Position numbers and translations under genes: made by a program. A model generated the notes under the pieces. That model made no database searches, was not told where the DNA came from, and saw nothing but the letters and a program-made list of their open reading frames with translations. Below are positions 28,397-56,270 of a stretch of 64,000 nt of DNA, in pieces (within the stretch, counting starts at the first letter, position 1; the number at the start of each line of letters is the position of its first letter). Location of the stretch: IMG/VR virus record IMGVR_UViG_3300027899_000001, positions 248,001 through 312,000 of that record; one strand, given 5' to 3'.

Positions 28397-29203
28397 ATGA
28401 GCAAACACTTTGACGAAATTATCATAATTGGTCTTGAGAGGTGTCAAAACAGAATTGACATGGTTGAATCTCAACTTAAAAATTTTAATCTTCCCTATCG
28501 TATCTTTCCCGCATTTGATGGACAGCAAATAGCAAATCCGTCAATGAAAACAATGACACGTGCTCCTCTTAAAGCATTTTCTAATTTTAATCCCAGTAGA
28601 CCTAAATATCTTCCGGGTATGTTATGTTGTGGGTTATCTCATATAGCAGCAATGAAACATGCTCAGATGATGAATCTTAAAGGAATACTTTTACTTGAAG
28701 ATGATGTCATATTATCTCCTGATTTTGCAGATAGATTAAAATTGATTGAAGAAGTTCCAGACGATGCAGATTTAATTTATATTGGAGCTATTGTGACAAG
28801 CGATCATTTAAGTAAGAAATATAAAATATCTGAACATGTATGGGATGCTCAGAAAATGAGTCTTTACGCAACTCATTCCTTTATAGTCACGCGTAAAGGA
28901 TATACACCAGTTATTAAAAAAATGATGGAATGCGAAGATACATGCGATTCATTATTAGTTGAAGGTGTTCAAAAACAGGAAATTAAAGCATATGCAGTAA
29001 TTCCATTTTGTACATATCAAATAGAAGGAACATCAGAAATTGATGGTAAAAAGAAATCATTAAATCATACAAAAACTTTATATTCTCCGGATGAAAATTT
29101 TAGTAACATGGGAGGCTATGATCGTAAAACTAAAATGAATGTTAATGATATAACAAGTGAATATAGCTACGAAAAAAGTGCAAAACCTAAATCTTTATTC
29201 TAA
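28397..29203 (+). CDS. Glycosyltransferase, GT25-like
   Basis: 'IIGLER...R', 'AFDG', 'LCCGLSH', 'LLLEDD'; ends KPKSLF. Confidence 0.75.
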   Translation: MSKHFDEIIIIGLERCQNRIDMVESQLKNFNLPYRIFPAFDGQQIANPSMKTMTRAPLKAFSNFNPSRPKYLPGMLCCGLSHIAAMKHAQMMNLKGILLLEDDVILSPDFADRLKLIEEVPDDADLIYIGAIVTSDHLSKKYKISEHVWDAQKMSLYATHSFIVTRKGYTPVIKKMMECEDTCDSLLVEGVQKQEIKAYAVIPFCTYQIEGTSEIDGKKKSLNHTKTLYSPDENFSNMGGYDRKTKMNVNDITSEYSYEKSAKPKSLF

Positions 29204-29337
29204 TGAACGAAAACAAATGTCCAAAACATGAATTAGTCTTCGTAAGAAATATCTACGAAGACAAAAAAAGTGAATGGAAATGTTCTAAATGTGGAAAAAC
29301 AAAATATAAAAAATATCTTAATAAAAGAGAAAAATGA
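29203..29337 (+). CDS. Small Zn-ribbon protein (44 aa)
   Basis: Hand-translated MNENKCPKH...WKCSKCGK...*; overlaps both neighbours. Confidence 0.45.
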   Translation: MNENKCPKHELVFVRNIYEDKKSEWKCSKCGKTKYKKYLNKREK

Positions 29338-29561
29338 ATGCACAAGAATATATCGATTATCTTAAAGATTTTGCTGAAAAAATAGATGATGAAACTCTTA
29401 AATCAGTAGGAATTAAATCTATTGCAATTATACAAGAAGTTCTTGCAAAAGATCCAATGAAACCAAAATTATTGGTAAAAAAATTAGATGAAACACAATA
29501 TAGTGTATATGGTAGAGATGAAATTTTAACAGAATTGAACAGAATATTTAGAGACGTATGA
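29334..29561 (+). CDS. Hypothetical protein
   Basis: 75 aa ORF. Confidence 0.55.
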   Translation: MNAQEYIDYLKDFAEKIDDETLKSVGIKSIAIIQEVLAKDPMKPKLLVKKLDETQYSVYGRDEILTELNRIFRDV

Positions 29562-30802
29562 AAATAGCTTTAGTAATGGGAAGAGGCGCAGAAGGCGCCG
29601 GAATTCAACGATATGTTATTGAATTATCGACATTTTTATCTAAAAAACAAATTGAACATATTATCTATATCATGGATGATAAAAAATGGGGACGTGGAGG
29701 ATTTCAAACATTTCCTCAAAAACCATCTATGATTACAAAAGATAACATTGATAATTTTTCAGATGTATTGAATAAATTTGATTATGTGTTTATCAATAGT
29801 GTTCCAAGTATTAAACATTCAGAATGGGCTATTGATGGATTTCTTAAAATGGTCAAGGGTATAAAAACCAAAAAGATTATATTTCAAAATGATCATAAAA
29901 TAGCTTCTATTCATAGAAATGCTAATTTTATTGAGATGTGTGGTCTTTGTGATGGTATAGTATCTCATAGTATTACATCTCCTTTCTATAATAAACTTGT
30001 AGATGTATATGGAGGCGCTGTTAGATCTAAATTTATTCAACTTCAAGTAGGATTTAATTTCTCTCAGTTAGCAAAATATCGTAAAGAAGATCATGTTAAA
30101 AAAATTACATATCTTGGTAGATATGCTACATTTAAACAACCTGACAGATTATTTGCTTTTCTTCCTTATGCTAAAGATAATGATATATTACTTGAAATGA
30201 AAGGTGTTGAAAGATCACTTGGCGCTTTGAATATCTTTTATGATGATATCGAAAATAAAATTCCCAAACATGATATCATTCAGGTTGATAAAAATTTCTT
30301 TAAAACTGGAATGTCAGCTTTAGATGCTGATAGAAGTTATGAACATGTTTATATATATGGTCCTTATGATTATGTAGATGGAATGGAAACATTAAGCAAA
30401 TCATTAGTAGGCGCAGATTTTTATCATCTTAATGCAGATGCATATGGAGATAATTTTGAATATGCTCAATGTGAAATAATTGGAGTAGGAACAGTTCCTA
30501 TGTTTGATTATCATTGGGCAGAAAATTGTTACATATATGAAAATGGTAAGAAAACTGATAAAAGATTTGTAGAACTTGATACTTATGGACTTTTTGTTAA
30601 AAAAGATTTAACAAATGTAAAGGAAATAGTAGAAAAAATTAACAATATATATTCTGATAAGAAACTTCATAAACAATATTTAGATTGTAGTTTTGAAGTT
30701 ACACGAAATCATTGTGATAGTGAATTTATATTTCAAAATCTTATAGATGGTATTTCAGGATTAGAAAAAGCAAAACAAATAAAAACTAAACCCTTATTTT
30801 AA
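29558..30802 (+). CDS. agt: DNA alpha-glucosyltransferase, T4 AGT-like
   Basis: 'MGRGAEGAGI', 'INSVP', 'NDH...S.HRN', 'SHS', 'GRYATFK', 'GVERS', 'EYAQCE...GTVP.F' parallel T4 AGT as recalled; ends KTKPLF. Confidence 0.8.
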   Translation: MKIALVMGRGAEGAGIQRYVIELSTFLSKKQIEHIIYIMDDKKWGRGGFQTFPQKPSMITKDNIDNFSDVLNKFDYVFINSVPSIKHSEWAIDGFLKMVKGIKTKKIIFQNDHKIASIHRNANFIEMCGLCDGIVSHSITSPFYNKLVDVYGGAVRSKFIQLQVGFNFSQLAKYRKEDHVKKITYLGRYATFKQPDRLFAFLPYAKDNDILLEMKGVERSLGALNIFYDDIENKIPKHDIIQVDKNFFKTGMSALDADRSYEHVYIYGPYDYVDGMETLSKSLVGADFYHLNADAYGDNFEYAQCEIIGVGTVPMFDYHWAENCYIYENGKKTDKRFVELDTYGLFVKKDLTNVKEIVEKINNIYSDKKLHKQYLDCSFEVTRNHCDSEFIFQNLIDGISGLEKAKQIKTKPLF

Positions 30803-30803
30803 A

Positions 30804-31730
30804 ATGGCACGACCTAAAAAAGTAAAAGTAGAAGAACCTGCTAAAATAGCAGTAGAAGAAAAAGAAACTCTAAATGATATTATAATTGAAAAAAGTAACA
30901 TTTATCCATTAGGAGAAATACAGATTGTAGATAATCCGGTGTTTGAAGTTCCATATTTGGAATTTAATTATAATAAAGAGTCTGACACCATTTCTCTAGA
31001 AAAACAAAAACAAACAATACAAGTTAGCACTTCTAGAGTAGGCACGCATATAACTTCAGAACAAGCTAAAGAATTTAAAGATAAATTTAATTTAGACTTA
31101 AACGAAGTTGTTAAAAAAGCATTGATAAATGAAGCTTCTCAACAATTAACAAAACATTATATATCAAAAATTGGAGAAGCTGCTACAGAAAATTATATTA
31201 AAGAATATACCCGTTGGGATAAGTTTAAAGTATGGGCATATAAACTTGTTAAAAAACAATATAGAAAAAAAATAAAAATTCAAACTTCTAAAGAGTTAAA
31301 TTATAGAATTTTAAAAGAAGCCAATAATATTGCAGCAAATAGTAGATGGGGAAGTGGAAATTTTGTTATATGTAGTTTAAAAACTGCTATGCTTTTACAG
31401 AGTTCATCTAATTTTGTATATGCTACTTTAAATAAACCTGTATCTACAAATGGCAGTATTTATCCAATTGGAACTATTGCAGGCGTGACTATTTATGTAG
31501 ATCCTTATATGTTATATCAAGATACTAATGTATACATAGGAAGAAGAAATAATACAAATCAGCCTGGCATAAAACTATTTTTTAAAGAATCTTATAGTTA
31601 TATGCAAACGGAAGGTCTTGGTGCTCCAAAGGTTATATTAGAAATGAGATACGCAATCGCAGGCGTTGGTAAAAATTATAAAGACCAATATAGAAAATTT
31701 GAATACATTGATAAAATCATAAACAAATGA
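30804..31730 (+). CDS. Truncated paralog of the major capsid protein
   Basis: 'NGSIYPIGTIAGVTIYVDPYMLYQDTNVYIGR...TEGLGAPKVILEMRYA' aligns with 'NGSLYPLGTIAGMTLYVDPNMLYSDTRVLVGR...TEGTGAPKVIIKTRYA' in 56803-58575. Confidence 0.8.
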   Translation: MARPKKVKVEEPAKIAVEEKETLNDIIIEKSNIYPLGEIQIVDNPVFEVPYLEFNYNKESDTISLEKQKQTIQVSTSRVGTHITSEQAKEFKDKFNLDLNEVVKKALINEASQQLTKHYISKIGEAATENYIKEYTRWDKFKVWAYKLVKKQYRKKIKIQTSKELNYRILKEANNIAANSRWGSGNFVICSLKTAMLLQSSSNFVYATLNKPVSTNGSIYPIGTIAGVTIYVDPYMLYQDTNVYIGRRNNTNQPGIKLFFKESYSYMQTEGLGAPKVILEMRYAIAGVGKNYKDQYRKFEYIDKIINK

Positions 31731-32026
31731 AAAAGAAATTAATAATTTTAGTATGTTATTTAAGTGTAAATGATGAATTATCTTATCAAGAAATTCAAGA
31801 ACATTTATCAGATTTTAAAAGAATTTTAGATGAATCATTTGATAATGAATTACAGGAAAATACAAATACTATAATTAAAAGTATAGTTTTACCTGTACAT
31901 TATCAGCCTACATCTATAGAATGTATTTTCCCAACAGAGCCTGATTTACCAGAAGAAGTAATTGAAAGACTTGAACAAATTGAATTAACACAGAAAAATT
32001 ATGACGAACACAGATCTAAGGATTAA
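31727..32026 (+). CDS. Hypothetical protein
   Basis: 99 aa ORF. Confidence 0.55.
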   Translation: MKKKLIILVCYLSVNDELSYQEIQEHLSDFKRILDESFDNELQENTNTIIKSIVLPVHYQPTSIECIFPTEPDLPEEVIERLEQIELTQKNYDEHRSKD

Positions 32027-32282
32027 ATATAAATTTGACACAGGATTATATCCAACTAAAATGGATTATCGTGGAAACCTAACTCAAGAATATGCTAAAT
32101 GGCTTGAAGAATATGGCGGTGATTATCCACCATTGTATTTAACTACTTGGCAACGTGAGTATTTCAAAAAAGAAACTGGAAATTACGCCACGTTTTATAA
32201 AAAAGGAAGAATACATTATAAACGAGACTATAGATTTTGGTTAGAAGATTTTGTGCGTAAAATATTATCATTAGAACAATAA
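32001..32282 (+). CDS. Hypothetical protein with an internal duplicated Y..WLE motif
   Basis: 93 aa; 'FDTGLY...YAKWLEE' and 'KETGNY...YRFWLED'. Confidence 0.55.
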   Translation: MTNTDLRIKYKFDTGLYPTKMDYRGNLTQEYAKWLEEYGGDYPPLYLTTWQREYFKKETGNYATFYKKGRIHYKRDYRFWLEDFVRKILSLEQ

Positions 32283-32298
32283 TCATAAGATATAAATT

Positions 32299-33018
32299 AT
32301 GAGTTTAATAGACGAACGATATGATAAACGAGTTTGTATTTGTCTTAAAGAAAGAGATGACAAGTATAAATATATGTTGGCACAATTTATTAAAAATAAT
32401 ATAGACGCTGAATTTTATAGGCCTGTAATTCAAGGACATGCACATCATTTTGTAAAACCTTATGCACAAATCTATAACAGAAGGGATATAAATTATGTAA
32501 GATTTAATGAAGAATTTCCTAATGAATTTGGATGTTTCTTAAGTCATTATAATGTTATTAAATCTGCTTTATTAGATGGTGCTGAAAGTATTTTTGTATT
32601 TGAAGATGATTGCGCATTTCATAAAGATTTTACTACATTACTTCCTAAATATTTAGATACTATTCCTGAAGGAACAGATGGAATTTTGCTTTATTCTTTT
32701 ATGTATCAATTTGAACCTCAAAATGTTAGATTAAAACCGAGATGGACAAAAGGATTTGCAAGTTGGTCTTTTTTAGCATATGGATTAAATAGAAGGGCAA
32801 TGGAAGGATATATTAAACTTCAAGATGAAACACCAATGATTGCAGATAGAGGATCTTGGACTATGATGACACAAATGAATTATAATTTTGTTATCGCAAG
32901 CCCTCCGTTAGTAGTTCCTTCAAAAATACTTACATCAAGTATTCGAGGAGAAAATAAAAATTATGAAAAAAACAAGAGTGTATTTTTATTAGGAATAAAT
33001 GAAACAGATTATGAGTAA
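32299..33018 (+). CDS. Glycosyltransferase, GT25-like
   Basis: 'EFGCFLSH', 'FVFEDD'. Confidence 0.7.
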   Translation: MSLIDERYDKRVCICLKERDDKYKYMLAQFIKNNIDAEFYRPVIQGHAHHFVKPYAQIYNRRDINYVRFNEEFPNEFGCFLSHYNVIKSALLDGAESIFVFEDDCAFHKDFTTLLPKYLDTIPEGTDGILLYSFMYQFEPQNVRLKPRWTKGFASWSFLAYGLNRRAMEGYIKLQDETPMIADRGSWTMMTQMNYNFVIASPPLVVPSKILTSSIRGENKNYEKNKSVFLLGINETDYE

Positions 33019-33286
33019 ATATAGAAAACTGCCAGTAATAATAGAAGCAGAATCTGTGACAGAACTTATATATAACGCAAAAAATAATTGGAGTGCACTT
33101 CCTAATTGGATAAAAGAAAATTATGAAAAAGGAAAAATTTTCTTTCTTAATAATAGTATAGAAATTATGACAGATGAAGGAAGAATGCGTGGCGAAAAAA
33201 ATGATTATATTATTAAAGGAATTCATAATGAAATTTATCCATGTAAACCTGATATATTTAATTTAACGTATGAAAAACTTGATTAA
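32999..33286 (+). CDS. Conserved phage hypothetical protein (likely start 33011)
   Basis: 'KYRKLPVIIEA...EG.M....DYIIKG...E.YPCKPDIF..TYE' is a widespread phage pattern. Confidence 0.65.
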   Translation: MKQIMSKYRKLPVIIEAESVTELIYNAKNNWSALPNWIKENYEKGKIFFLNNSIEIMTDEGRMRGEKNDYIIKGIHNEIYPCKPDIFNLTYEKLD

Positions 33287-33440
33287 AGAAGAACATAATG
33301 AAGCTAAAATTATAATTGAAGATGCTTCTGTAATATTAGAAGGCGAATTTACAGAATTCGCTGATATTGATCCTTCAGGAAGATATTGGTTATATAGATG
33401 GGATCATAATAAAAAAGAATGGATAAAAACAAAATGGTGA
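33270..33440 (+). CDS. Small hypothetical protein (56 aa)
   Basis: Hand-translated MKNLIKEEHNE...WIKTKW*; fills an operon gap. Confidence 0.4.
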   Translation: MKNLIKEEHNEAKIIIEDASVILEGEFTEFADIDPSGRYWLYRWDHNKKEWIKTKW

Positions 33441-33456
33441 ATAAATAAAATAAAAA

Positions 33457-33657
33457 ATGACAACATTACTTAAAAGAACACTAAAACCAAACAAATGGAT
33501 TGGTGGTGTTTGTGGCGGTCTCGGCAAATTTTTTGGAGTAGATCCACTTATTTGGAGACTGATTTTTATATTTGGAAGTATGTTTACAATATTTCCGTTT
33601 ATAGTAACTTATGTAGTTATGTGGATTATAGTTCCAAAAGAAACTCCAACCGTTTAA
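33457..33657 (+). CDS. pspC: PspC-domain membrane protein
   Basis: 'KWIGGVCGGLGKFFGVDP..WRL.F....Y..MWI.VP'. Confidence 0.85.
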   Translation: MTTLLKRTLKPNKWIGGVCGGLGKFFGVDPLIWRLIFIFGSMFTIFPFIVTYVVMWIIVPKETPTV

Positions 33658-33669
33658 TACCTTTACTTT

Positions 33670-34449
33670 ATGACATTTGCAACGTATGTAATGACATTCG
33701 ATCAAGAAAAATGGATCATGCGAAATCTTGAGAATGCCTATCCTCATGTAGATAATATCTATGTAATGTATAGTAAATTACCATGGGGATATAATCCACA
33801 AGCAAGAGAAACTTATACAAATTCATTTGATTTGAATATCATTAAAAATTCTCCTTATATGGACAAAATAACCATTATTGAAGGAGATTGGATGAGTGAT
33901 ACTGATCAAAGAAATGCTTGTCTTCAACGTGCTAAAAAAGATGGATATGATTTTTTAATGGTTCATGATGCAGATGAATTTTATTTTCATAATGATTTTG
34001 ATAAAATAATTGATTATGTTCATACATATGAAAATTATGATGTATTTGATATAAATCTTTATGCATTTTGGAAATCATTTAAATATGTTTTAATAGATCC
34101 ATCAAAACCGCATAGAATAGGCGGCACAAATCAAACAGTTGTTAATTTACGCAGAGTTGATAAATATGATTACATTAGAGATACTCATACAAAAAATCGT
34201 GTAACAATTCCTGATATAATATGCTATCACGGATCTTATGTATTAACAAATGAAGAAGTATATAAAAAAATAAAAACTTGGAGTCATAATAATGATTTTA
34301 ACGTAGATGATTGGTATAATAAGGTGTGGCTACCTTGGACTATAGAATCTAAAAATTTACATCCTATTTGGCCTTGGTGTTGGGATCATTGTGAAGTATT
34401 TGAAAATATGTTGCCTGAAGCAATAGAAGATTTTGATTTTGTAAACTAA
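33670..34449 (+). CDS. Glycosyltransferase, GT-A/GT2-like
   Basis: 'QRN..L......D.....DADE' pattern. Confidence 0.65.
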   Translation: MTFATYVMTFDQEKWIMRNLENAYPHVDNIYVMYSKLPWGYNPQARETYTNSFDLNIIKNSPYMDKITIIEGDWMSDTDQRNACLQRAKKDGYDFLMVHDADEFYFHNDFDKIIDYVHTYENYDVFDINLYAFWKSFKYVLIDPSKPHRIGGTNQTVVNLRRVDKYDYIRDTHTKNRVTIPDIICYHGSYVLTNEEVYKKIKTWSHNNDFNVDDWYNKVWLPWTIESKNLHPIWPWCWDHCEVFENMLPEAIEDFDFVN

Positions 34450-34462
34450 AATATAAATAATT

Positions 34463-34651
34463 ATGGCAAAAGAACCCTTTGTAGATGTAATAGAGAAGTC
34501 AACTCTATATTTATCGTTATCAGAAAATCTTTTAATTAAATTAGATCGTTTTTTATGTAATACAAATTTAACAAAAAAAGAACAAGAAAATATAATAAAA
34601 ATTATAGAAGAAATTTATAGTGAAGCATATGTTAATAGTTTAACAGATTAA
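34463..34651 (+). CDS. Hypothetical protein
   Basis: 62 aa ORF. Confidence 0.5.
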   Translation: MAKEPFVDVIEKSTLYLSLSENLLIKLDRFLCNTNLTKKEQENIIKIIEEIYSEAYVNSLTD

Positions 34652-35383: not shown

Positions 35384-35386
35384 AAT

Positions 35387-37828: not shown

Positions 37829-37829
37829 T

Positions 37830-38132: not shown

Positions 38133-38133
38133 A

Positions 38134-41234: not shown

Positions 41235-41246
41235 ATAATATAAATT

Positions 41247-44512: not shown

Positions 44513-44517
44513 AATAT

Positions 44518-45234: not shown

Positions 45235-45250
45235 TTTAATAATCTATAAA

Positions 45251-46910: not shown

Positions 46911-46916
46911 TTAAAA

Positions 46917-47701: not shown

Positions 47702-47749
47702 ATGAATAAAAAAATAGCGCTTATCACCGGGATAACTGGCCCACATTAA
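47702..47749 (+). pseudogene. Stranded 5' remnant of gmd (MNKKIALITGITGPH*)
   Basis: Hand-translated; aligns with NKKIALVTGING at the start of the intact gmd. Confidence 0.8.
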
Positions 47750-50316: not shown

Positions 50317-50317
50317 A

Positions 50318-51022
50318 ATGAAACTTTTAATTTTAATATTAGGGGCAAATGACCAAACCAGCACAAATTTAATAGAAAATGGTATACTACCCACGTGGGG
50401 GCAAGATGTTTCTAATGATATTCAAATAATGTATTATTATGGAGATAAACCTAAAAATGAAATTGTAGGAAATAATATATTTTTAACCACATCTGATGCA
50501 TATGGAATTCCGATGTTTAAAAAAACTTGTGATGCATTTCAACTAGTTTTTGATAATATTGATTTTGATATAATGTTTAGAACTAATGTTAGTACATATG
50601 TAAGAACAAAATATCTTCATAAAATTTTATCTGAGCAAAAACCCATCGATTTATTTGGATCTGCTATTCCTAGTAATGTAGTTCCAGGAACATTTACAGG
50701 AATAACTGCGGTTTTTTCAAAAGATGTTATTGGAAAAATATTAGAAAATAGAAATGCGACAAACCCCGTTAAAGAACCCGAAGATATGGCAATAGAATAT
50801 CTTTTAAAAAATAAAATTTTTAAAGATTCATATACATATCTTTTTAAAAATTTTAAAAGATTTGATATCTTAGAAAATTCTATTCTACGATTACAAGATC
50901 CGTTATTTTTTTTAAAACATAATGATGAATATACATTTAGATGTAAAACTGTTAATGGAAATAGAAACATGGATGTTGAAAAAATGAAACAATTATATAA
51001 AATATTTAATAGTAATATATAA
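50318..51022 (+). CDS. Putative glycosyltransferase, GT31/fringe-like
   Basis: 'TWG', 'K...AF......FD...RTN..TYV', 'EDMAI'. Confidence 0.55.
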   Translation: MKLLILILGANDQTSTNLIENGILPTWGQDVSNDIQIMYYYGDKPKNEIVGNNIFLTTSDAYGIPMFKKTCDAFQLVFDNIDFDIMFRTNVSTYVRTKYLHKILSEQKPIDLFGSAIPSNVVPGTFTGITAVFSKDVIGKILENRNATNPVKEPEDMAIEYLLKNKIFKDSYTYLFKNFKRFDILENSILRLQDPLFFLKHNDEYTFRCKTVNGNRNMDVEKMKQLYKIFNSNI

Positions 51023-51031
51023 ATAAAACTT

Positions 51032-51592
51032 ATGTATTGGGAAAAAATTTATGGTTGGTTTACATTTCAAACATTATATGATGAAATGGTTAAAAAATAT
51101 GATAATGCTATCTTTGTTGAAATTGGCACATTTAAAGGGAAGTCTATTGTATACTTAGCTGAAGAAGTAAAAAAAGCAAATAAAAATATTAAAATCTATG
51201 GAATTGATTTATTTATCGTTGATGGGCAAATGATATTTAATAGCCCTGATCTTAAAACTCCAAAGGGATATAATTTTTATGAAGAATTTATACGAAATAT
51301 TGAGCCAGTAAAAGAATACATTACTCCTATACAAATGAGTAGTTTAGATGCTTATAAAGAATTTGAAGATGAAAGCGTAGATTTTTTATTTATTGATGGA
51401 GAACATCTATATGAAATAGTCATTGAAGAATTAAATTTGTGGTATCCCAAAATTAAAAAGGGTGGTATTATCGGCGGTCATGATTATTGGTGGGGCGATG
51501 GAGGCGTAAAAAAAGCAGTAGGAGAATTTTTTCCAATGGGTGAAATTAAAATTGAATCAGATGATTCAACTTGGACAGTTTATAAATCATAA
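51032..51592 (+). CDS. Class I SAM methyltransferase (Methyltransf_24-like)
   Basis: 'VEIGTFKGKS', 'DFLFIDGEH.YE', 'K.GG.I.GHDY'. Confidence 0.85.
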   Translation: MYWEKIYGWFTFQTLYDEMVKKYDNAIFVEIGTFKGKSIVYLAEEVKKANKNIKIYGIDLFIVDGQMIFNSPDLKTPKGYNFYEEFIRNIEPVKEYITPIQMSSLDAYKEFEDESVDFLFIDGEHLYEIVIEELNLWYPKIKKGGIIGGHDYWWGDGGVKKAVGEFFPMGEIKIESDDSTWTVYKS

Positions 51593-51604
51593 AAAAATAA
51601 AAAT

Positions 51605-52207
51605 ATGGACAGACCTGGGCAATTAAATAGAGAAACGGTAATAGGAAAAAAAATATATGAATTAACAACACTTCCTGAAATTTCTACAGTAGTTGATATT
51701 GGAACATGGAATGGTAATGGAAGTACTCGATGTATTTATGAAGGAATATTAGAGAGTAGAAAAAAAGATTATAAAGTTTTATCGTTTGAAATTGATAGAA
51801 ATTTTTATAAACAAGCAAAATTTAATTTATTTCCTCCTTTAAACAATTTTGATTTAGTTTATGGATCTTTAGTATCTTATGAAGAACTAATAAAGCAACG
51901 AGAAATTTATGGCAATCATAAATGGTTAGAAGAAGATTTAGTAAATTTATCAAAGGCTCCTTATGTATTTAATATGGTGCCCGAGAAAATTAATTTATGT
52001 GTAATGGATGGAGGAGAATTTTCAGGATATATAGAATTTACTAAATTATGGAAAAGATGTGATTACATTGTATTAGATGATACTCTTACATATAAACACA
52101 CGGAAAGTAGAAAATTTATACTCGATAATTTAGATGATTTTACTGTAATTTATGATAATATTAATGAAAGAAATGGTTGTATGATAGTTAATGTTAAACA
52201 GAAATAA
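51605..52207 (+). CDS. Methyltransferase-like protein
   Basis: 'VDIGTWNG.GST', 'MDGGEF', 'LDD'. Confidence 0.55.
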   Translation: MDRPGQLNRETVIGKKIYELTTLPEISTVVDIGTWNGNGSTRCIYEGILESRKKDYKVLSFEIDRNFYKQAKFNLFPPLNNFDLVYGSLVSYEELIKQREIYGNHKWLEEDLVNLSKAPYVFNMVPEKINLCVMDGGEFSGYIEFTKLWKRCDYIVLDDTLTYKHTESRKFILDNLDDFTVIYDNINERNGCMIVNVKQK

Positions 52208-52967
52208 AATGAAAGTACTTTTAGTAACACTTGCGATAGGAGAAGCTTATTTAAAACAATATGAATTATTATTTAAACAAAGTCAAGAAAACTACGCCAA
52301 AAGATATAAATATGATTTTAAAGTAATTACAGATTTTTTAGATAAAGATAAAAATAATCAACTTAAATCTACTATTACTTTTAATAAGATATTAGTATGT
52401 AGTCAAGAATGGTCAAAAGACTATGATTTAATAATATTTGTTGATGCAGATATTTTAATTAGTGTTTGGGCTCCACCGTTGCATAATTATATGGATTATG
52501 AGAATCTTATTGGAATGGTTGATGAATTTTCTCAACCAACAAAAGCTAAAAGATTAGAACTACATAAGAGACAGAAATGGGAAGCAAATGCTGTTGAATT
52601 TTATAAATTATGTGATTTAGATATTGAAACAGATATGGTTTTTAATACAGGCGTAATGGTAATGCAACCAAAAATACATGCAGATTTTTTAGAAGGCATA
52701 TATAAAAAATATATAGAAAAATCAAAAACACATAAAAGAGGCTACATTTTTGAAGAAACTTGTATAAGTTATGAAATGCAAAAAAATAATTTATATAAAA
52801 TTTTACCTAATAAATTTAATGCTCTTTGGGCATTAATAGCTTGGGATAATATAGATAATATACTTCTAGAAGATTTTTTTAGAGATAACTATTTTACACA
52901 TTTCGCAGGACAAGCAGAACTTGCTAAAGTACCTGCATTACATAAACAATATAATACTCTTTTTTAA
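52191..52967 (+). CDS. GT-A glycosyltransferase (GT34/GT8-like; likely start 52209)
   Basis: 'FVDADIL', 'FNTGVM', 'THFAG'. Confidence 0.65.
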   Translation: MLNRNKMKVLLVTLAIGEAYLKQYELLFKQSQENYAKRYKYDFKVITDFLDKDKNNQLKSTITFNKILVCSQEWSKDYDLIIFVDADILISVWAPPLHNYMDYENLIGMVDEFSQPTKAKRLELHKRQKWEANAVEFYKLCDLDIETDMVFNTGVMVMQPKIHADFLEGIYKKYIEKSKTHKRGYIFEETCISYEMQKNNLYKILPNKFNALWALIAWDNIDNILLEDFFRDNYFTHFAGQAELAKVPALHKQYNTLF

Positions 52968-53817
52968 AATGTTTGATTTTATAAATGGAAATAAATTTTG
53001 CGATTTTGCAACGTATTCTATATTCCCTTGGGATAATTTGCATTGGACAAATGATATATTACGAAAAAATGCTATTATATATGTTAAAACAGATTTTATT
53101 CAAGATGTATTTAATCAATTAAAATTTTCATCTAATAAATATGTTTTAATAACGCATATGTCCGATTATGCGATAACAGAAAATATATTTAAAAGTCGTC
53201 CTTCTTGTATTAAAAAATGGTTTGCTCAAAATGCTGTATATGATCACCCCGATCTTATTCCAATTCCAATTGGTATAGAAAATCATAAAGGAAATCAAAA
53301 AGGAAAATCAACAGATCATCAGTGGTTATCAGAAAACTTAGAAATATTACGTGCTAATCCTAAAAATGAAAAAATACTTTATTGTAACTGGTATACTCCA
53401 AATAATCCTGTTGCTCGTACTGGAATACTACAAAAATTACGAAATAATAATGTTCAATATATCTGGGATAGACAAGGAGGAGAAGAAGATAATAAAGAAA
53501 ATGATAATAAAATAGCTAAACTTACATATTATCAATATTGTGATCACGTATCACGTTATAAATTTATGGTGTGTCCTCCAGGACATGGCGTTTCTATTCA
53601 TCAACCATTTGAAGCTATGTATTTTGGATGTGTTCCTATAGTTATACGACACAGAATTTATAATAATTGTGAAGATATGCCAATGATTCAGGTAAATGAT
53701 TGGACAGAAGTAAACTATAACTTACTTGAAGCATATAATAATAAAATAGTTAATAATGAAAAAATTTATATGCCTTATTGGGAAAACTTAATTACAACTG
53801 AATTTAATAAATTATGA
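52921..53817 (+). CDS. Exostosin-like (GT47-type) glycosyltransferase (likely start 52969)
   Basis: 'YKF..CPPG.G...H..FEA.Y.GCVPIV'. Confidence 0.65.
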   Translation: MLKYLHYINNIILFFKMFDFINGNKFCDFATYSIFPWDNLHWTNDILRKNAIIYVKTDFIQDVFNQLKFSSNKYVLITHMSDYAITENIFKSRPSCIKKWFAQNAVYDHPDLIPIPIGIENHKGNQKGKSTDHQWLSENLEILRANPKNEKILYCNWYTPNNPVARTGILQKLRNNNVQYIWDRQGGEEDNKENDNKIAKLTYYQYCDHVSRYKFMVCPPGHGVSIHQPFEAMYFGCVPIVIRHRIYNNCEDMPMIQVNDWTEVNYNLLEAYNNKIVNNEKIYMPYWENLITTEFNKL

Positions 53818-54896
53818 GAGTAATAGTCATTGGTGCAGGTATTCATGGATTAAGTACAGCAATTACATTAGCTAATAACGGATTTGATGTTACAGTATTA
53901 GAACAAAATAATGCTATAATGTCAGGCACATCTAATGCTACACATAATCGTGCTCATTTAGGATTTCATTATCCACGATCATATGAAACCGCATTAGAAT
54001 GTATGAATGGATTAGACTTATTTAAACAAAAGTATAACGATGTTCTAGTTTATCCTAAAAAAAATTATTATCTTATTTCAGATATTTCAAATGTAACATT
54101 TGAAGAATATGAGAATTTTTGTAATCATATTAATGTACCATATAAAATAGAAATGCCTACGGGATATGTTTATGAAGAACATATTACTGGTGCTATATTA
54201 GTAAATGAACCTATATTTGATATAAAAAAATTAAAAACACTACTCTTTTCTGAATTATTAAACAATGGAATTTCTATACATGTTAACGCTAAAGTAACTG
54301 GATTTTATCCATTTTCGACAAATTCAGATTATACTGTTATTACAACAAATGGTACTTTTAAAACTGATTTAATAATAAATGCAACCTATGCTTTTTCAAA
54401 TAATACTCTTAAAATTTTAGGATTAGAAGAAGATATGACAGAATATTATTTACAAGATACTGAAGTAGTAGTTGTAAAAAGTCCAGTTTCTTTACCATCA
54501 TTAACAATTATGGATGGAAAGTTTTTTTCTATAATGGAATATGCTAATGAAATTACAAATTTATATTTATTATATGATGTTGTCAATTCCATTTTATCAA
54601 AAGAAGAAGGCTATTATTACACTCCAAAAAAATATGAAACAAATTTTAAAAAGATTATAGAACACGGCTCAGAATATTTTCCATTTTTTAAAGATCTTGA
54701 ATATGTTGAATCTTGGTATGGATCACGACCAATACCAGTTAAAATTACTACTGATGCAAGAACTACAAGAATTGTTTCACATAAAAAATATAAAGGAATT
54801 TATTCAATTTTAGAAGGTAAATTTATATCAGCTCCTTTAATTGCTAATAAAGTTGTCTCATTAATACAAACAGAATTATATGAAAAAAATAATTAG
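53814..54896 (+). CDS. FAD-dependent oxidoreductase
   Basis: 'VIGAGIHG', 'GTS...HNR.HLG.HYPRS'. Confidence 0.85.
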   Translation: MRVIVIGAGIHGLSTAITLANNGFDVTVLEQNNAIMSGTSNATHNRAHLGFHYPRSYETALECMNGLDLFKQKYNDVLVYPKKNYYLISDISNVTFEEYENFCNHINVPYKIEMPTGYVYEEHITGAILVNEPIFDIKKLKTLLFSELLNNGISIHVNAKVTGFYPFSTNSDYTVITTNGTFKTDLIINATYAFSNNTLKILGLEEDMTEYYLQDTEVVVVKSPVSLPSLTIMDGKFFSIMEYANEITNLYLLYDVVNSILSKEEGYYYTPKKYETNFKKIIEHGSEYFPFFKDLEYVESWYGSRPIPVKITTDARTTRIVSHKKYKGIYSILEGKFISAPLIANKVVSLIQTELYEKNN

Positions 54897-55527
54897 TTTT
54901 TCACTTTGGGGCGATAATCCAAAATATTTGCAAGGAGCTATTGAAAATATTAAATTACAAAAACAATTATTTCCAGATTGGATTTGTAGATTTTATTATC
55001 ATGAATCAATAAATCATAGATATATTTCAGAATTATATCACGATGGTGCTGAAATAATTATAAAACATGAAAATCCTGTAATTAAACATATGGACGCTCC
55101 AGGAATGTTTTGGAGATTTGAAGTTCTTAAGGATAGTGATGTAGAAAGATTTATAGTTAGAGATTGTGATGGAAGATTATCTCAACGAGAAGTAAATTGT
55201 GTAAAAGATTGGGAATTTTCTGAAAAGGAATTTCATATTATAAGAGATCATATTCATCATAATACTAAAATTATGGGCGGTGTGTGGGGAGCAACAAAAG
55301 AATTTATAAATAGAATAGATTATGATGATCTGTTAAAACAATTTAACACATTACAATATAATAATATATATGCTTCTGATCAAGAATTTCTTGCAAGAAT
55401 GATATATCCTTTAATTAAAGAATCTGCATGTATTCATGATGATTGGGATAGATATCGTGAAAACGCAAAAAAAATACCTCACATGAGAGAAGAAAATCAT
55501 TTTATAGGAGAACCAATAGAATTATGA
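54880..55527 (+). CDS. Putative glycosyltransferase (viral 'FSLWG...RDCD...RE' family)
   Basis: 'SFSLWG..PKY..GA.EN', 'MFWRF', 'RDCD.R...RE', 'RDH..H', 'DQ.FL'. Confidence 0.55.
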   Translation: MKKIISFSLWGDNPKYLQGAIENIKLQKQLFPDWICRFYYHESINHRYISELYHDGAEIIIKHENPVIKHMDAPGMFWRFEVLKDSDVERFIVRDCDGRLSQREVNCVKDWEFSEKEFHIIRDHIHHNTKIMGGVWGATKEFINRIDYDDLLKQFNTLQYNNIYASDQEFLARMIYPLIKESACIHDDWDRYRENAKKIPHMREENHFIGEPIEL

Positions 55528-56270
55528 AAAAAGTACACATATCATTCGGAAATGAAGATTATTATAAAAGTTTAGATGTATTAGAAGAATCATCTTTAGT
55601 AGTAGGAAAAATAGATCAATTTATTAGATATACTCAAAATGAATTAAAAATTGAAGAATTTTGGAGAAAAAATTCTTTCATATTATCTCAACATAGAGGT
55701 GCAGGATTTTGGATATGGAAACCTTATCTTATCTTAAAGACATTTGAAACGCTCGAGAATGGTGATACAGTCCTCTACAGTGATGCAGGACTTAAAGTAA
55801 TAGATAACCTTAGTCCTTTATTTGATATCGCTAAAAGCAATATTAATAAGGGTAAAATTATTTTTAAAGTACCCTGGGTTGGCGCAAATCATATTGCTAA
55901 AATATGGACTAAAAGAGATTGTTTTATATTAACAGATGCTGATGAAGAAAAGTACTGGAATGCTCCTATGACTAATGGTGCAGTTTCATTATGGGTAAAA
56001 AATGAAGATAATATAAATTTCTTAAAAGAATGGTTAAGATATTTAAGAGATACAAGAATTGTAACTGATGATCCTAATATGTGCGGAAAAGCAAATTTTA
56101 TAGAATTTAAAGATCATAGACATGATCAGTCTGTTTTAACTATTTTATCTGTAAGAAATAATTTTGAGTTGTTTAGAGATCCTACTCAATGGGGAAACGA
56201 AGAAAAGGGCAAATTCTTAAATTCACCCTATTCTCAATTATTTCATCATCACCGAAATTTTAAACATTAA
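55524..56270 (+). CDS. Putative glycosyltransferase ('WKPY...D.G...HRHDQS' family)
   Basis: 'RGAGFWIWKP', 'LYSDAG', 'HRHDQS.L'. Confidence 0.55.
   Translation: MKKVHISFGNEDYYKSLDVLEESSLVVGKIDQFIRYTQNELKIEEFWRKNSFILSQHRGAGFWIWKPYLILKTFETLENGDTVLYSDAGLKVIDNLSPLFDIAKSNINKGKIIFKVPWVGANHIAKIWTKRDCFILTDADEEKYWNAPMTNGAVSLWVKNEDNINFLKEWLRYLRDTRIVTDDPNMCGKANFIEFKDHRHDQSVLTILSVRNNFELFRDPTQWGNEEKGKFLNSPYSQLFHHHRNFKH

What the first reader, a model, noticed from the sequence alone, without database searches (positions are those of the whole stretch)
28397..56270. ~28-kb phage glycosylation island of O-antigen-locus scale
Seen: roughly 14 GT-like ORFs (GT25 x3, AGT, GT10, GT-A x2, GT-B x3, and GT31-, GT34/8-, GT47-like plus two unassigned), five or six methyltransferases, a GNAT, a DegT, reductases, gmd, a radical SAM protein and an FAD oxidoreductase, all on one strand. 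No Wzx/Wzy/ABC exporter or Und-P priming transferase is recognisable. Established: giant eukaryotic viruses build their own glycans on capsid and fibre proteins with soluble GTs. Inference: lipid-carrier-independent assembly of a complex methylated/acetylated glycan on virion proteins (the island abuts the collagen and MCP genes) and/or on DNA.
Basis: partly seen in the sequence, partly recalled or inferred. Interest (0 to 1): 0.82.

Follow-up and report, generated by a model that had tools for sequence, protein, structure and literature searches.

The report
Hypervariable sugar island in a megaphage
A freshwater giant phage related to the gut Lak megaphages carries a real 28-kb block of about 41 same-strand genes, mostly sugar-building and sugar-transferring enzymes, that is swapped cassette by cassette between relatives; one fixed part probably sweetens the phage's own DNA, while the target of the rest (virion, DNA or host surface) cannot be settled from sequence.

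Summary
Window 28397-56270 holds 41 tightly packed + strand ORFs. About 15 are glycosyltransferase-like, 5-6 are methyltransferases, and the rest include a GNAT, DegT, Gmd, an EvaA-type 2,3-dehydratase, a sugar C-methyltransferase, reductases, a radical SAM protein and an FAD oxidoreductase. No ORF in the 64 kb looks like a flippase, polymerase, ABC exporter or priming transferase.

The window is part of a 405-kb freshwater phage contig. Its capsid protein is 48% identical to those of the Prevotella Lak megaphages.

- The island sits at a fixed locus between a conserved acidic protein gene and the capsid gene. It is 15-21 kb in five relatives, which share only 42-61% of its genes.
- Only three genes are invariant: a full-length homologue of T4 DNA alpha-glucosyltransferase, a 93-aa ORF and one GT25.
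- A clear T4-type dCMP hydroxymethylase lies 16 kb upstream, so hydroxymethylcytosine DNA glycosylation is likely.
- A dideoxy/C-methyl sugar cassette has no match in 50,697 GenBank phage records.
- A homing endonuclease sits next to a gmd remnant, which points to cassette exchange.

The acceptor of the variable part is unresolved. I favour virion proteins. Closest known: cyanomyovirus sugar islands, T-even DNA glucosylation, and giant-virus and mycobacteriophage virion glycosylation. I rate it a new variant of a known kind.

The parts
11683..12384 (-). T4 gp42-type dCMP hydroxymethylase. It lies outside the island but is probably functionally linked to the AGT homologue.
   Evidence: PDB 1b49, E 3e-73, full length. 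It keeps 'DFMCT' (the catalytic Cys, and an acidic residue at the L143 position), 'RSND' (D169) and 'RND' (N177D). The criteria come from PMC13326640. 45-54% identical to T-even enzymes. Conserved at 70% in relative R1, 12 kb from its island.
13566..14180 (-). Thymidylate-kinase-like protein, a possible dNMP kinase for hm-dCMP.
   Evidence: Weak precomputed Pfam Thymidylate_kin hit. No PDB sequence match.
26974..28281 (+). Conserved acidic 435-aa protein of unknown function that marks the left border of the island.
   Evidence: 45-59% identical homologues flank the island in relatives. pI 4.1. No Pfam or PHROG hit.
28299..28326 (.). 12-bp G+C-rich hairpin, terminator-like on both strands, separating the border gene from the island.
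28397..29203 (+). GT25 glycosyltransferase no. 1 (variable gene).
   Evidence: Pfam PF01755, 5.7e-14. Paralogue of 43841.
29203..29561 (+). Two small ORFs: 44 aa with Cys pairs suggesting a zinc ribbon (by eye), and 75 aa.
29558..30802 (+). Homologue of T4 DNA alpha-glucosyltransferase (AGT). Invariant gene of the locus.
   Evidence: Pfam AGT, 1.6e-11. PDB 1y8z/1xv5/1y6f, E 1.6e-18, residues 1-399 against 3-400, and the only PDB family hit; the Asp of the T4 'QHDH' motif is kept. 68-70% identical in all 5 relatives. 93 metagenomic homologues, nearly all carrying PF11440.
30804..31730 (+). gp23-like capsid-protein paralogue covering only the C-terminal half of the fold.
   Evidence: Pfam Gp23, 1.5e-21. 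PHROG major head protein. phmmer against the window capsid protein, 1e-37. 39%-identical homologue at the same place in R1 only.
31727..32282 (+). Two small ORFs. 32001-32282 (93 aa, basic) is invariant across relatives.
32299..33018 (+). GT25 glycosyltransferase no. 2. Invariant gene of the locus.
   Evidence: Pfam 1.1e-11. 62-71% identical in all 5 relatives. 26-27%-identical homologue in Lak phages, at a different locus.
32999..33657 (+). Small ORFs, including a 66-aa PspC-like single-pass membrane protein (33457-33657).
   Evidence: Pfam PspC at the same position in a relative. 58% and 44% identical in R1 and L022.
33670..34449 (+). GT2-like GT-A glycosyltransferase (sub-threshold hit; it has a 'DADE' motif).
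   Evidence: Pfam 8e-4, 19.8 bits against a 23.3 cut-off. 69% identical in R2 and R3.
34463..36124 (+). A 62-aa ORF followed by two tandem paralogues of a virus-specific GT9-like family.
   Evidence: Paralogy 1e-65. ESM Atlas structure neighbours are GT9 and TPR-GT9 proteins. Family alignment A2.
36127..37385 (+). Two methyltransferases: Methyltransf_24 and FkbM.
37382..39240 (+). GNAT acetyltransferase, a 100-aa ORF, and a DegT aminotransferase. Together these look like a perosamine-type amino-sugar module.
   Evidence: Pfam. The best PDB match of the DegT is GDP-perosamine synthase 3bn1, 9e-42. The module co-occurs with gmd in relatives L004, L010 and L014.
39241..42185 (+). Dideoxysugar cassette: RmlD-like reductase, EvaA-type NDP-hexose 2,3-dehydratase, and a GFO/IDH/MocA (3-ketoreductase-like) oxidoreductase.
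   Evidence: Pfam. PDB EvaA 4j7g, 5.8e-90. KijD10 sugar 3-ketoreductase is among the GFO hits. RmlD hits are weak. The same cassette, plus an RmlC-like gene, occurs in two metagenomic homologue contigs whose islands hold GT25, FucT, PspC and GT47 genes. No match in GenBank phages.
42198..43064 (+). GT10 alpha-1,3-fucosyltransferase-like glycosyltransferase.
   Evidence: FucT_N 1.6e-17 plus GT10. 46-62% identical in 9 related loci.
43037..43837 (+). Short radical SAM/SPASM protein of unknown role.
43841..45634 (+). GT25 no. 3, the third GT9-like paralogue, and a DUF6165 protein.
   Evidence: Pfam.. DUF6165 is fused to this GT9-like domain in giant-virus proteins.
45615..47696 (+). Sugar 3-C-methyltransferase and a class I methyltransferase.
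   Evidence: Methyltransf_14, 4.9e-42. PDB MtmC D-mycarose 3-C-methyltransferase 4rv9, 1.8e-35, and TcaB9.
47702..47749 (+). 15-codon remnant of the 5' end of a gmd allele.
   Evidence: Its translation matches the N-terminus of the intact Gmd.
47805..48566 (+). HNH/NUMOD3 homing endonuclease that overlaps the start of gmd.
48544..49608 (+). GDP-mannose 4,6-dehydratase (Gmd).
   Evidence: Pfam 4.4e-128. NCBIfam equivalog above cut-off.
49615..52207 (+). GT-A fold glycosyltransferase (49615), GT31/Fringe-like glycosyltransferase (50318), Methyltransf_24 (51032), and an unassigned 200-aa ORF (51605).
52191..56270 (+). GT8-like (52191), GT47-like (52921), DAO-type FAD oxidoreductase (53814), virus-specific GT-like 54880, and GT8-like 55524.
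   Evidence: Pfam. ESM Atlas. 54880 and 55524 are 42-73% identical in many relatives. A 55524 homologue sits in the sugar island of cyanophage P-TIM68.
56273..56710 (-). Collagen-like 145-aa protein (about 31 G-X-Y triplets, Thr-rich, no Lys). A variable fibre-like gene between the island and the capsid gene.
   Evidence: Pfam Collagen, 1.6e-15. Sequence. R1 has the same N-terminus but 'FATNASVGL' repeats; L022 has similar repeats.
56755..56781 (.). 12-bp hairpin between the capsid gene and the collagen-like gene, terminator-like on both strands.
56803..58575 (-). gp23-type major capsid protein, the right border of the locus.
   Evidence: Pfam Gp23, 1.2e-38. 48% identical to Lak phages. 70-84% identical in 22 IMG/VR contigs.

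Best explanation
The island is a phage-encoded, cytoplasmic glycan-building locus with two parts.

Part 1 is an invariant left module: the AGT homologue 29558, the 93-aa ORF 32001 and GT25 32299. Together with the T4-type dCMP hydroxymethylase 16 kb upstream, it most likely glycosylates 5-hydroxymethylcytosine in the phage's own DNA, as in T-even phages.

Part 2 is a hypervariable cassette region. It makes activated unusual sugars:
- an N-acetyl-perosamine-like amino sugar, from Gmd + DegT + GNAT;
- a 2,6-dideoxy, 3-C-methyl (olivose/mycarose-like) hexose, from the EvaA-like dehydratase + 3-ketoreductase + C-methyltransferase + RmlD-like reductase.
About a dozen soluble glycosyltransferases then string the sugars into an oligosaccharide that is O-methylated and N-acetylated, without any phage-encoded lipid-carrier export step. 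I consider the most likely acceptor to be virion surface proteins, namely the variable fibre-like protein encoded between the island and the capsid gene and/or the capsid itself. That would give each lineage its own 'virion serotype'.

Cassettes are exchanged between relatives by recombination, helped by homing endonucleases.

Shown: gene content, homologies, locus architecture, variability, and the presence of the hmC pathway.
Inferred: sugar identities, that the GTs act on one glycan, and every acceptor.
For: Enzyme content.
No membrane or export proteins.
Fixed locus with variable content: the island is bounded by the homologue of 26974 and the capsid gene in 5 relatives. It is 15-21 kb there against 28 kb here, with only 42-61% of their ORFs shared and only 3 genes universal.

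DNA part:
- AGT homology is end to end.
- The hydroxymethylase has the T4-type diagnostic residues.
- Both are conserved in relative R1.
- In GenBank phages the two families occur in near-identical sets of T-even records.

Protein-acceptor lean:
- The 44518 and 54880 families are structurally closest to the catalytic domains of bacterial TPR-fused proteins. The TPR-plus-GT layout is that of the flagellin glycosyltransferase FlmG (PMC7591256).
- Several families are shared with giant viruses, which glycosylate capsids with soluble viral GTs (PMC5408694, PMC7826918).
- The 55524 and GT25 families sit in the sugar island of cyanophage P-TIM68, whose whole genome has no gp42-type hydroxymethylase and no AGT.
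- A capsid paralogue lies inside the island.
- The gene between island and capsid gene is a small protein with variable repeats: collagen-like here, NxS/T-rich repeats in R1 and L022.

Cassette exchange: gmd remnant plus HNH endonuclease, and endonuclease-like genes in relatives' islands.
Against: No experiment or read-level data bears on any acceptor.
- DNA-acting GTs described so far also look like LPS/GT8/GT-B enzymes, so fold cannot separate DNA from protein acceptors.
- The AGT homologue is only 25% identical to T4 AGT, and its best GenBank hit is Bacillus phage G gp306. I did not check that phage's DNA chemistry.
- The hydroxymethylase is 16 kb away on the other strand, not clustered with the GTs as it is in RB69 and DLP3.
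- The fibre-like gene is present in only 3 of about 20 relatives.
- No RmlA/RmlB-type enzyme for the dideoxysugar branch and no GDP-fucose synthase were found in the window. Donors must come from the host, from elsewhere in the 405-kb genome, or from an unusual GDP-linked route.
- Expression timing is unknown. The shared AT-rich upstream motif occurs on both flanks and is not diagnostic.
Confidence: 0.4

Rival explanations
1. The whole island, invariant and variable parts alike, builds one complex glycan on hydroxymethylcytosine in the phage DNA. The AGT homologue adds the first sugar and the other GTs extend it. Variability would reflect an arms race with host nucleases and glycosylases that recognise modified DNA.
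For: - The AGT homologue and the T4-type dCMP hydroxymethylase are both conserved.
- Phage DNA glycans of up to three sugars are documented, as are phage-encoded NDP-sugar synthesis genes for them.
- GTs that add secondary sugars to DNA resemble GT8/LPS enzymes and a chlorovirus capsid GT.
- AGT is transcribed in the same apparent unit as the rest, with no strong internal terminator.
Against: - About 15 GTs and 5-6 methyltransferases far exceed any DNA glycan described (three sugars at most).
- The 55524 and GT25 families occur in P-TIM68, which lacks both the hydroxymethylase and AGT.
- The closest structural relatives of 4 GTs are TPR-fused bacterial proteins.
- No homologue of the T2 second-sugar transferase is present.
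- A large glycan on 13% of all bases would add much mass to packaged DNA (my inference).
Confidence: 0.2
2. The island remodels the infected host's envelope glycans (LPS O-antigen or core, or capsule). It would supply new sugars and GTs that act on the host's own lipid-linked intermediates. The host's priming, flipping and ligation machinery would do the rest, for example to block superinfection or to alter grazing. This is the explanation usually offered for cyanophage 'LPS' islands.
For: - The GT families (GT25, GT10, GT8, GT9-like, GT2) and the sugars (perosamine-type, deoxyhexoses) are typical of LPS loci.
- Homologous GTs lie in cyanomyovirus sugar islands that the literature interprets this way.
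- O-antigen GTs are themselves soluble or peripheral, so lack of TM segments fits (established knowledge).
- A small PspC-like membrane protein is semi-conserved in the island.
Against: - No priming transferase, flippase, polymerase, ligase or exporter is present in 64 kb.
- The locus is embedded at the head-gene module and carries a capsid paralogue.
- The island has the phage's own extreme base composition (GC 0.24-0.29).
- The nearest homologues of the AGT-like and EvaA-like proteins lie on metagenomic contigs, some of which carry the same island genes, rather than in named bacteria.
Confidence: 0.25
3. The cluster makes a glycosylated small molecule or modified peptide (natural-product-like) rather than decorating DNA, virions or envelope.
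For: - The EvaA/C-methyltransferase/3-ketoreductase set is best known from actinomycete antibiotic sugars (PDB hits EvaA, MtmC, TcaB9 and KijD10).
- A radical SAM/SPASM protein is present.
Against: - No aglycone-forming genes (PKS, NRPS or a RiPP precursor) and no exporter are present.
- The number of GTs is far beyond what a natural product needs.
Confidence: 0.04
4. The island is a decaying or chimeric region: acquired bacterial DNA being lost, or an assembly artefact.
For: One 15-codon gmd remnant. High turnover between relatives.
Against: - All 41 ORFs are intact and tightly packed.
- Composition matches the flanks.
- Shared genes are 45-80% identical across relatives, which is consistent with purifying selection.
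- Contigs from two samples show the same spacing and are identical over every stretch fetched.
Confidence: 0.02

Closest known systems
Sugar ('LPS' / cell-wall synthesis and modification) islands of large T4-like cyanophages (P-SSM2, S-SCSM1, S-SCSM2R, P-TIM68)
   Same: - A T4-type myovirus with one long same-strand block of many GTs (13 in S-SCSM2R, including GT10 and GT25) plus NDP-sugar enzymes.
- No export genes were found, and the acceptor is unknown.
- There is direct homology: the 55524 family (36% identity) and a GT25-like gene lie inside the P-TIM68 island.
   Different: - The present phage is a Lak-related freshwater megaphage of at least 405 kb.
- Its island is anchored next to the capsid gene and carries an AGT homologue, with a T4-type hmC pathway nearby. 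P-TIM68 has neither.
- It encodes a 2,3-dehydratase/C-methyl dideoxysugar route found in no GenBank phage record.
T-even phage DNA glucosylation (gp42 dCMP hydroxymethylase + alpha/beta-glucosyltransferases)
   Same: - An orthologous hydroxymethylase, 51-54% identical, with all diagnostic residues.
- A full-length AGT homologue.
   Different: - AGT identity is only 25%.
- No homologue of T2's beta-glucosyl-HMC-alpha-glucosyltransferase is present.
- AGT here heads a 28-kb block of further sugar genes.
- The hmC content of the DNA is untested.
Phage DNA hypermodification gene clusters with their own NDP-sugar synthesis (RB69/DLP3 arabinosyl-5hoC; RL38JI hexosyl chains; TET/5mYOX-associated GT clusters)
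   Same: - A thymidylate-synthase homologue, several GTs and sugar-nucleotide enzymes are encoded by the phage.
- The GTs resemble LPS enzymes.
   Different: - Those clusters are compact, with 1-3 GTs and glycans of at most three sugars, and the synthase sits inside the cluster.
- Here the synthase keeps Asp at the D169 position, which marks a hydroxymethylase rather than a 5-hydroxycytosine synthase.
- Here it also lies 16 kb away.
Virus-encoded virion glycosylation: chlorovirus PBCV-1 capsid glycans, Mimivirus-family fibril glycans, mycobacteriophage capsid/tail glycans
   Same: - Soluble virus-encoded GTs, methyltransferases and GDP-sugar enzymes (Gmd) work without ER/Golgi or lipid carriers.
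- Gene sets are clade-specific (mycobacteriophages as summarised).
- GT31-like, GT9-like/DUF6165 and 54880-like families are shared with Nucleocytoviricota.
   Different: - No glycan has been observed on this phage.
- The host is a bacterium.
- The gene number exceeds the two GTs reported for a mycobacteriophage.
- The locus shows O-antigen-like cassette turnover.
Bacterial O-antigen/capsule gene clusters
   Same: A fixed chromosomal site between conserved flanking genes; mosaic cassettes of NDP-sugar genes, GTs and methyl/acetyl-transferases; perosamine- and deoxyhexose-type sugars.
   Different: No initiating transferase, Wzx, Wzy, Wzz, ABC transporter or ligase is present. The cluster is encoded by a phage, next to its capsid gene.

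Membership tests
T-even-type hydroxymethylcytosine DNA glucosylation system | dCMP hydroxymethylase (a thymidylate-synthase homologue) with the catalytic Cys, Asp at the N177 position, an acidic residue at the L143 position, and Asp (not Asn) at the D169 position | tested here: met
   Window 11683-12384(-): PDB 1b49, 3e-73. The motifs DFMCT, RSND and RND are all kept.
T-even-type hydroxymethylcytosine DNA glucosylation system | A DNA glucosyltransferase of the AGT or BGT family | tested here: met
   29558-30802 matches Pfam AGT above cut-off and T4 AGT structures end to end at 1.6e-18. This shows homology only; activity on DNA is untested.
T-even-type hydroxymethylcytosine DNA glucosylation system | A kinase for hm-dCMP, and exclusion of dCTP (gp1-like and gp56-like functions) | tested here: inconclusive
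   Only a weak thymidylate-kinase-like hit at 13566-14180. No dCTPase was identified in the window. The other 340 kb of the genome was not examined.
T-even-type hydroxymethylcytosine DNA glucosylation system | hmC, or glycosyl-hmC, actually present in virion DNA | not testable with these tools
   This needs nucleoside LC-MS or native-DNA signal data. The one run found is held only as assembled contigs.
Wzx/Wzy- or ABC-dependent O-antigen/capsule locus | An initiating (Und-P priming) transferase | tested here: not met
   No multi-pass membrane ORF in the 64 kb, and no matching Pfam hit.
Wzx/Wzy- or ABC-dependent O-antigen/capsule locus | A flippase with polymerase, or an ABC exporter | tested here: not met
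   As above.
Wzx/Wzy- or ABC-dependent O-antigen/capsule locus | NDP-sugar synthesis genes and GTs in mosaic cassettes between conserved flanks | tested here: met
Virus-encoded virion protein glycosylation (chlorovirus / Mimivirus / mycobacteriophage type) | Soluble virus-encoded GTs and sugar-nucleotide enzymes, independent of lipid-carrier export | tested here: met
Virus-encoded virion protein glycosylation (chlorovirus / Mimivirus / mycobacteriophage type) | Glycan covalently attached to a structural protein | not testable with these tools
   This needs glycoproteomics of virions. Only circumstantial hints are available.
Cyanomyovirus-type phage sugar island | A long same-strand block of GTs plus NDP-sugar enzymes in a T4-type myovirus, with homologous GT families | tested here: met
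   P-TIM68 island 155-173 kb. The 55524 family matches at 36% identity (E 5e-32) and there is a GT25-like hit. The literature is covered.
2,6-dideoxy / 3-C-methyl hexose (olivose/mycarose-type) NDP-sugar pathway | 2,3-dehydratase + 3-ketoreductase + C-3 methyltransferase + 4-ketoreductase | tested here: met
   EvaA 5.8e-90. GFO family hits include KijD10. MtmC and TcaB9, 1.8e-35. The RmlD-like hit is weak. Assignment is at family level only.
2,6-dideoxy / 3-C-methyl hexose (olivose/mycarose-type) NDP-sugar pathway | Nucleotidylyltransferase and dTDP-glucose 4,6-dehydratase to supply the 4-keto-6-deoxy precursor | tested here: not met
   None is present in the window; the only 4,6-dehydratase is Gmd. 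The precursor may come from the host, from elsewhere in the genome, or through a GDP-linked route (my inference).
GDP-perosamine / N-acetylperosamine pathway | Gmd + GDP-perosamine synthase + N-acetyltransferase | tested here: inconclusive
   Gmd meets the equivalog cut-off. The best PDB match of the DegT is perosamine synthase, but it falls below every NCBIfam equivalog cut-off. The acetyltransferase is a GNAT, not the PerB type.

The most novel reading that the evidence does not exclude
The entire hypervariable island writes a lineage-specific, methylated, deoxy/amino-sugar-capped oligosaccharide onto hydroxymethylcytosine. It would be a DNA 'O-antigen' far more complex than any known DNA modification, diversified by an arms race with modification-dependent host nucleases.
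Probability: 0.15. Interest if true: 0.92.

Novelty: new variant of a known kind. Interest (0 to 1): 0.62.

Why it matters
Large sugar-gene islands in phages have been known for twenty years from cyanophages, and their target has never been established. This locus offers a better handle on that question for four reasons:
- It lies at a fixed site between conserved genes, in a clade with many metagenomic relatives.
- It separates cleanly into an invariant module, tied to a T4-type hmC pathway, and exchangeable cassettes.
- It carries chemically distinctive sugars (dideoxy, C-methyl, N-acetyl-amino) that would be easy to trace by mass spectrometry in DNA, virions or host envelope.
- It shows a mechanism for cassette turnover, namely homing endonucleases.

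It also extends T-even-style hydroxymethylcytosine chemistry to the Lak-related megaphage lineage. And it places an actinomycete-type deoxysugar pathway in a phage, which the GenBank phage collection does not contain.

Whichever acceptor proves right, the result would say what very large phages spend about 7% of their genome on.

Tried and rejected
- **Stop-codon recoding.** From my own knowledge, Lak phages recode TAG. In this window, reading through TAG or TGA joins no adjacent ORFs meaningfully, and code 11 gives dense coding. Rejected.
- **Synteny with Lak-A2 and LR756500.** There are no island homologues within 20 kb downstream of their capsid genes. The only Lak homologue, a GT25, stands alone elsewhere.
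- **Second-sugar DNA transferase.** T2 beta-glucosyl-HMC-alpha-glucosyltransferase was compared with all island ORFs, and by profile with the GT9-like and GT25 families. No relation was found. The T2 a-gt.2-5 small ORFs are also unrelated to the island's small ORFs.
- **GT25 as a collagen hydroxylysine galactosyltransferase analogue.** The collagen-like region has no lysine. Rejected.
- **Isoelectric point as a DNA-binding hint.** T2 AGT and its partner are themselves acidic, so pI is uninformative.
- **Promoter class.** An AATATATAAAA-like motif precedes head genes, the border gene and some left-flank genes, and a related motif precedes the island. It is not diagnostic of timing. Sigma-70-like hits are below shuffle expectation.
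- **PHROGs and permissive Pfam searches.** These gave nothing for the unassigned ORFs.
- **AF2 on 49615 as a single sequence.** It failed (pLDDT 32). It succeeded with a 72-sequence alignment.
- **Read laying on the only run found.** The run is held as Logan contigs and gave only 20-40-nt spurious pieces.
- **Near-identity DNA search in GenBank phages.** No relative was found.

Full report
**What the window is.** The 64-kb window is AT-rich (GC 0.24-0.35). It matches positions about 248-312 kb of a 405,016-bp IMG/VR contig, and the same sequence is found in a 133-kb contig from a second sample. The only public run that holds it is a freshwater metagenome. The head module is T4-like: a prohead-protease/scaffold fusion at 58658-61003 and a gp23-type major capsid protein at 56803-58575. 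The capsid protein's best matches in GenBank phages are the Prevotella Lak megaphages (48% identity) and a 462-kb uncultured phage (41%). No GenBank phage is close at the DNA level. IMG/VR holds 22 contigs with capsid proteins 70-84% identical. Lak phages are known, from my own knowledge, to recode TAG, but this window reads well in the standard code.

**Checking the observation.** The finding's coordinates are exact. From 28397 to 56270 there are 41 consecutive + strand ORFs, counting five of 44-75 aa that fill the apparent gaps. Strong hairpins lie at 28299-28326 and 56755-56781, and none as strong lies between them.
- Pfam places five glycosyltransferases (GTs) above threshold: GT25 three times, AGT and GT10. 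Four more are just below: GT47-, GT8- (two) and GT2-like.
- Six ORFs without Pfam hits are also GT-like. Three are paralogues of a virus-specific GT9-like family. 54880 belongs to a virus-specific family. 50318 is GT31/Fringe-like. 49615 has a GT-A fold: its family has 812 representatives, the AF2 model reached pLDDT 96, and the top Foldseek hits were GnT-I, POMGnT1, TarP and SpsA.
- Five methyltransferases, a GNAT, a DegT, Gmd (which meets the NCBIfam equivalog cut-off), an RmlD-like and a GFO-family oxidoreductase, a radical SAM/SPASM protein and a DAO-type flavoprotein are all confirmed.
Nor did it list the sugar C-methyltransferase identity of 45615 (MtmC/TcaB9), a gp23-like capsid paralogue at 30804, an HNH/NUMOD3 homing endonuclease at 47805, or a 66-aa PspC-like membrane protein.
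- No ORF in the whole window has more than three hydrophobic segments, and those with two or three are short, mostly out-of-frame ORFs. The absence of flippase, polymerase, exporter and priming transferase is therefore real for these 64 kb.

**Locus architecture across relatives.** The acidic 435-aa protein just left of the island (26974-28281) has 45-59%-identical homologues in related contigs. In five relatives I could join loci to cover the whole interval from that gene to the capsid gene.
- The interval is 15-21 kb there, against 28 kb here.
- It is filled with same-strand sugar genes in every case.
- Only 42-61% of their ORFs have a homologue in the window.
- Only three genes occur in all five: the AGT-like GT (68-70% identity), a basic 93-aa ORF (32001) and GT25 no. 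2 (62-71%).
- A second tier recurs in many but not all relatives: the GT10, GT25 no. 3, the GT9-like family, 54880, 55524, 33670, gmd and DegT.
- The 2,3-dehydratase cassette is absent from those five. It appears, with an added RmlC-like epimerase, in two metagenomic homologue contigs whose islands also hold GT25, FucT, PspC and GT47 genes.

Lak-A2 and the 462-kb phage have nothing comparable within 20 kb of their capsid genes. The base composition of the island equals that of the flanks. This is a long-resident, fixed-site, cassette-exchanging locus, so the O-antigen analogy holds for architecture as well as size.

A mechanism for exchange is visible. A 15-codon remnant of a gmd 5' end lies at 47702-47749, immediately before the homing endonuclease gene, which itself overlaps the intact gmd. 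Endonuclease-like genes also sit in or beside several relatives' islands.

**The DNA lead.** The AGT-like protein aligns with T4 DNA alpha-glucosyltransferase over its whole length (residues 1-399 against 3-400; E 1.6e-18). It hits no other PDB family, and the Asp of the T4 'QHDH' motif is kept. Precomputed Pfam labels for the left flank pointed to a thymidylate-synthase homologue at 11683-12384. This protein is 51-54% identical to T-even dCMP hydroxymethylases (PDB 1b49, 3e-73).

A 2026 paper sets out how to read such enzymes:
- Asp at the N177 position specifies dCMP as the substrate.
- An acidic residue at the L143 position goes with a hydroxymethyl rather than a methyl product.
- Asn at the D169 position marks the 5-hydroxycytosine synthases of RB69 and DLP3.

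The window protein has Asp, Asp and Asp at these positions, which is the T4 pattern. The enzyme is also present, at 70% identity, 12 kb from the island in relative R1. In GenBank phages the AGT and hydroxymethylase families are found in almost the same T-even records. I therefore think it likely (about 0.7) that this phage replaces cytosine with hydroxymethylcytosine and that the AGT homologue glycosylates it.

**The sugars (inferred).**
- Gmd, a DegT whose best solved relative is GDP-perosamine synthase, and a GNAT co-occur in several relatives together with the 100-aa ORF 37830. This suggests an N-acetyl-perosamine-like sugar.
- The EvaA-like dehydratase, the GFO-family enzyme (KijD10 is among its hits), the MtmC-like C-methyltransferase and the RmlD-like reductase would make a 2,6-dideoxy, possibly 3-C-methyl hexose.
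- The window lacks the RmlC-like epimerase seen in relatives, so a D-configured sugar is likelier here.
- No nucleotidylyltransferase, no dTDP-glucose dehydratase and no GDP-fucose synthase is encoded in the window.
- No GenBank phage record has a 2,3-dehydratase homologue.

**The acceptor of the variable part.** Sequence cannot settle this.

*For DNA.* Known DNA-glycan clusters encode their own NDP-sugar enzymes, and their GTs look like LPS enzymes.

*Against DNA.*
- The number of GTs and methyltransferases far exceeds the three-sugar maximum described.
- There is no homologue of the T2 second-sugar transferase.
- The 55524 and GT25 families sit in the sugar island of cyanophage P-TIM68, whose complete genome has neither a gp42-type enzyme nor AGT.

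*For virion proteins.*
- The locus adjoins the head module, and a capsid paralogue lies inside it.
- The GT9-like and 54880 families most resemble the catalytic domains of bacterial TPR-fused proteins. That layout is the one used by the flagellin glycosyltransferase FlmG.
- Several families are shared with giant viruses, which glycosylate capsids with soluble viral enzymes.
- The gene between island and capsid gene encodes a small protein with variable repeats. Here it is collagen-like and Thr-rich. In R1 it has the same N-terminus followed by 'FATNASVGL' repeats carrying at least nine NxS/T sequons, and L022 has similar repeats.
- That gene is absent from most relatives, so it cannot be the only acceptor.

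*For the host envelope.* The GT and sugar types are LPS-like, and this is the interpretation usual for cyanophages. Against it is the total lack of lipid-carrier genes, although the host's own machinery could serve.

My weights are: two-part model with a virion acceptor 0.4, host envelope 0.25, all-DNA 0.2, other 0.06.

**Comparison and novelty.** Large sugar islands of unknown target are already described in T4-like cyanophages, and this island shares GT families with one of them. hmC glucosylation, DNA glycan clusters and virion glycosylation are also known kinds. New here are:
- the lineage (a Lak-related freshwater megaphage);
- the fixed-site mosaic architecture with a three-gene invariant core;
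- the co-occurrence with a T4-type hmC pathway;
- the actinomycete-style deoxysugar cassette;
- the homing-endonuclease footprint.

I rate it a new variant of a known kind, with interest 0.62. The most novel reading that the evidence does not exclude is a complex DNA-borne glycan (probability about 0.15).

Noticed in passing
window 11683-12384 (-), with 13566-14180 (-), 15811-17022 (-) and 8919-9290 (-): A T4 gp42-type dCMP hydroxymethylase with all diagnostic residues lies 16 kb left of the island. Nearby are a thymidylate-kinase-like protein, a C5 cytosine DNA methylase and a weak nucleoside deoxyribosyltransferase-like ORF. The phage therefore probably has hydroxymethylcytosine DNA.
   Followed up: yes
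window 47702-47749 (+) and 47805-48566 (+): A 15-codon remnant of a gmd 5' end sits immediately upstream of an HNH/NUMOD3 homing endonuclease gene. That gene overlaps the intact gmd. This looks like the footprint of a cassette replaced by homing.
   Followed up: partly
window 30804-31730 (+); R1 = L044:16260-17255 and L044:18827-19270: A gp23-like paralogue covering only the C-terminal half of the capsid fold lies inside the island. The closest relative has a 39%-identical copy plus a 147-aa paralogue of the prohead-protease N-domain. The other four relatives lack both.
   Followed up: partly
window 56273-56710 (-); L003:11522-12127 (+); L022:11898-12521 (+): The small gene after the capsid gene is variable. 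It is collagen-like here (G-X-Y repeats, Thr-rich, no Lys or Pro). In L003 it has the same 17-aa N-terminus followed by 'FATNASVGL' repeats carrying at least 9 NxS/T sequons, and L022 has similar repeats. Most other relatives lack it.
   Followed up: partly
window 33457-33657 (+): A 66-aa PspC-domain-like single-pass membrane protein is the only membrane protein in the island. It recurs after GT25 no. 2 in R1, in L022 and in one ENA relative.
   Followed up: partly
window 56749, 26948, 62900, 19930, 18273, 8253 (motif starts): The motif AATATATAAAA lies about 20-30 nt upstream of several start codons on both strands, including the collagen-like gene and the island's border gene. A related TAATATAAAATA precedes the island. 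It is promoter-like, but its timing class is unknown.
   Followed up: partly
whole window: There is no sign of TAG or TGA reassignment, although the nearest named relatives (Lak phages) are reported to recode TAG.
   Followed up: yes
L048:14701-16368 (+) and L049:16684-18351 (+): In two relatives the GT9-like domain occurs twice in tandem within one 555-aa protein. The ESM Atlas shows the same domain fused to DUF6165, GNAT or GT2 in other phages and in giant viruses.
   Followed up: no
window 20924-22099 (-), 23813-24517 (-), 14149-15069 (-), 19947-20966 (+): The left flank holds a lysine-2,3-aminomutase-like radical SAM protein, a SET-domain protein and two TnsA-like endonuclease-domain proteins (one with DUF7487). 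Their roles are unknown.
   Followed up: no
window 58658-61003 (-): The prohead protease (S77/S80) domain is fused to a long C-terminal region, probably the scaffold, in one 781-aa protein. It is conserved at 53-71% in close relatives.
   Followed up: no
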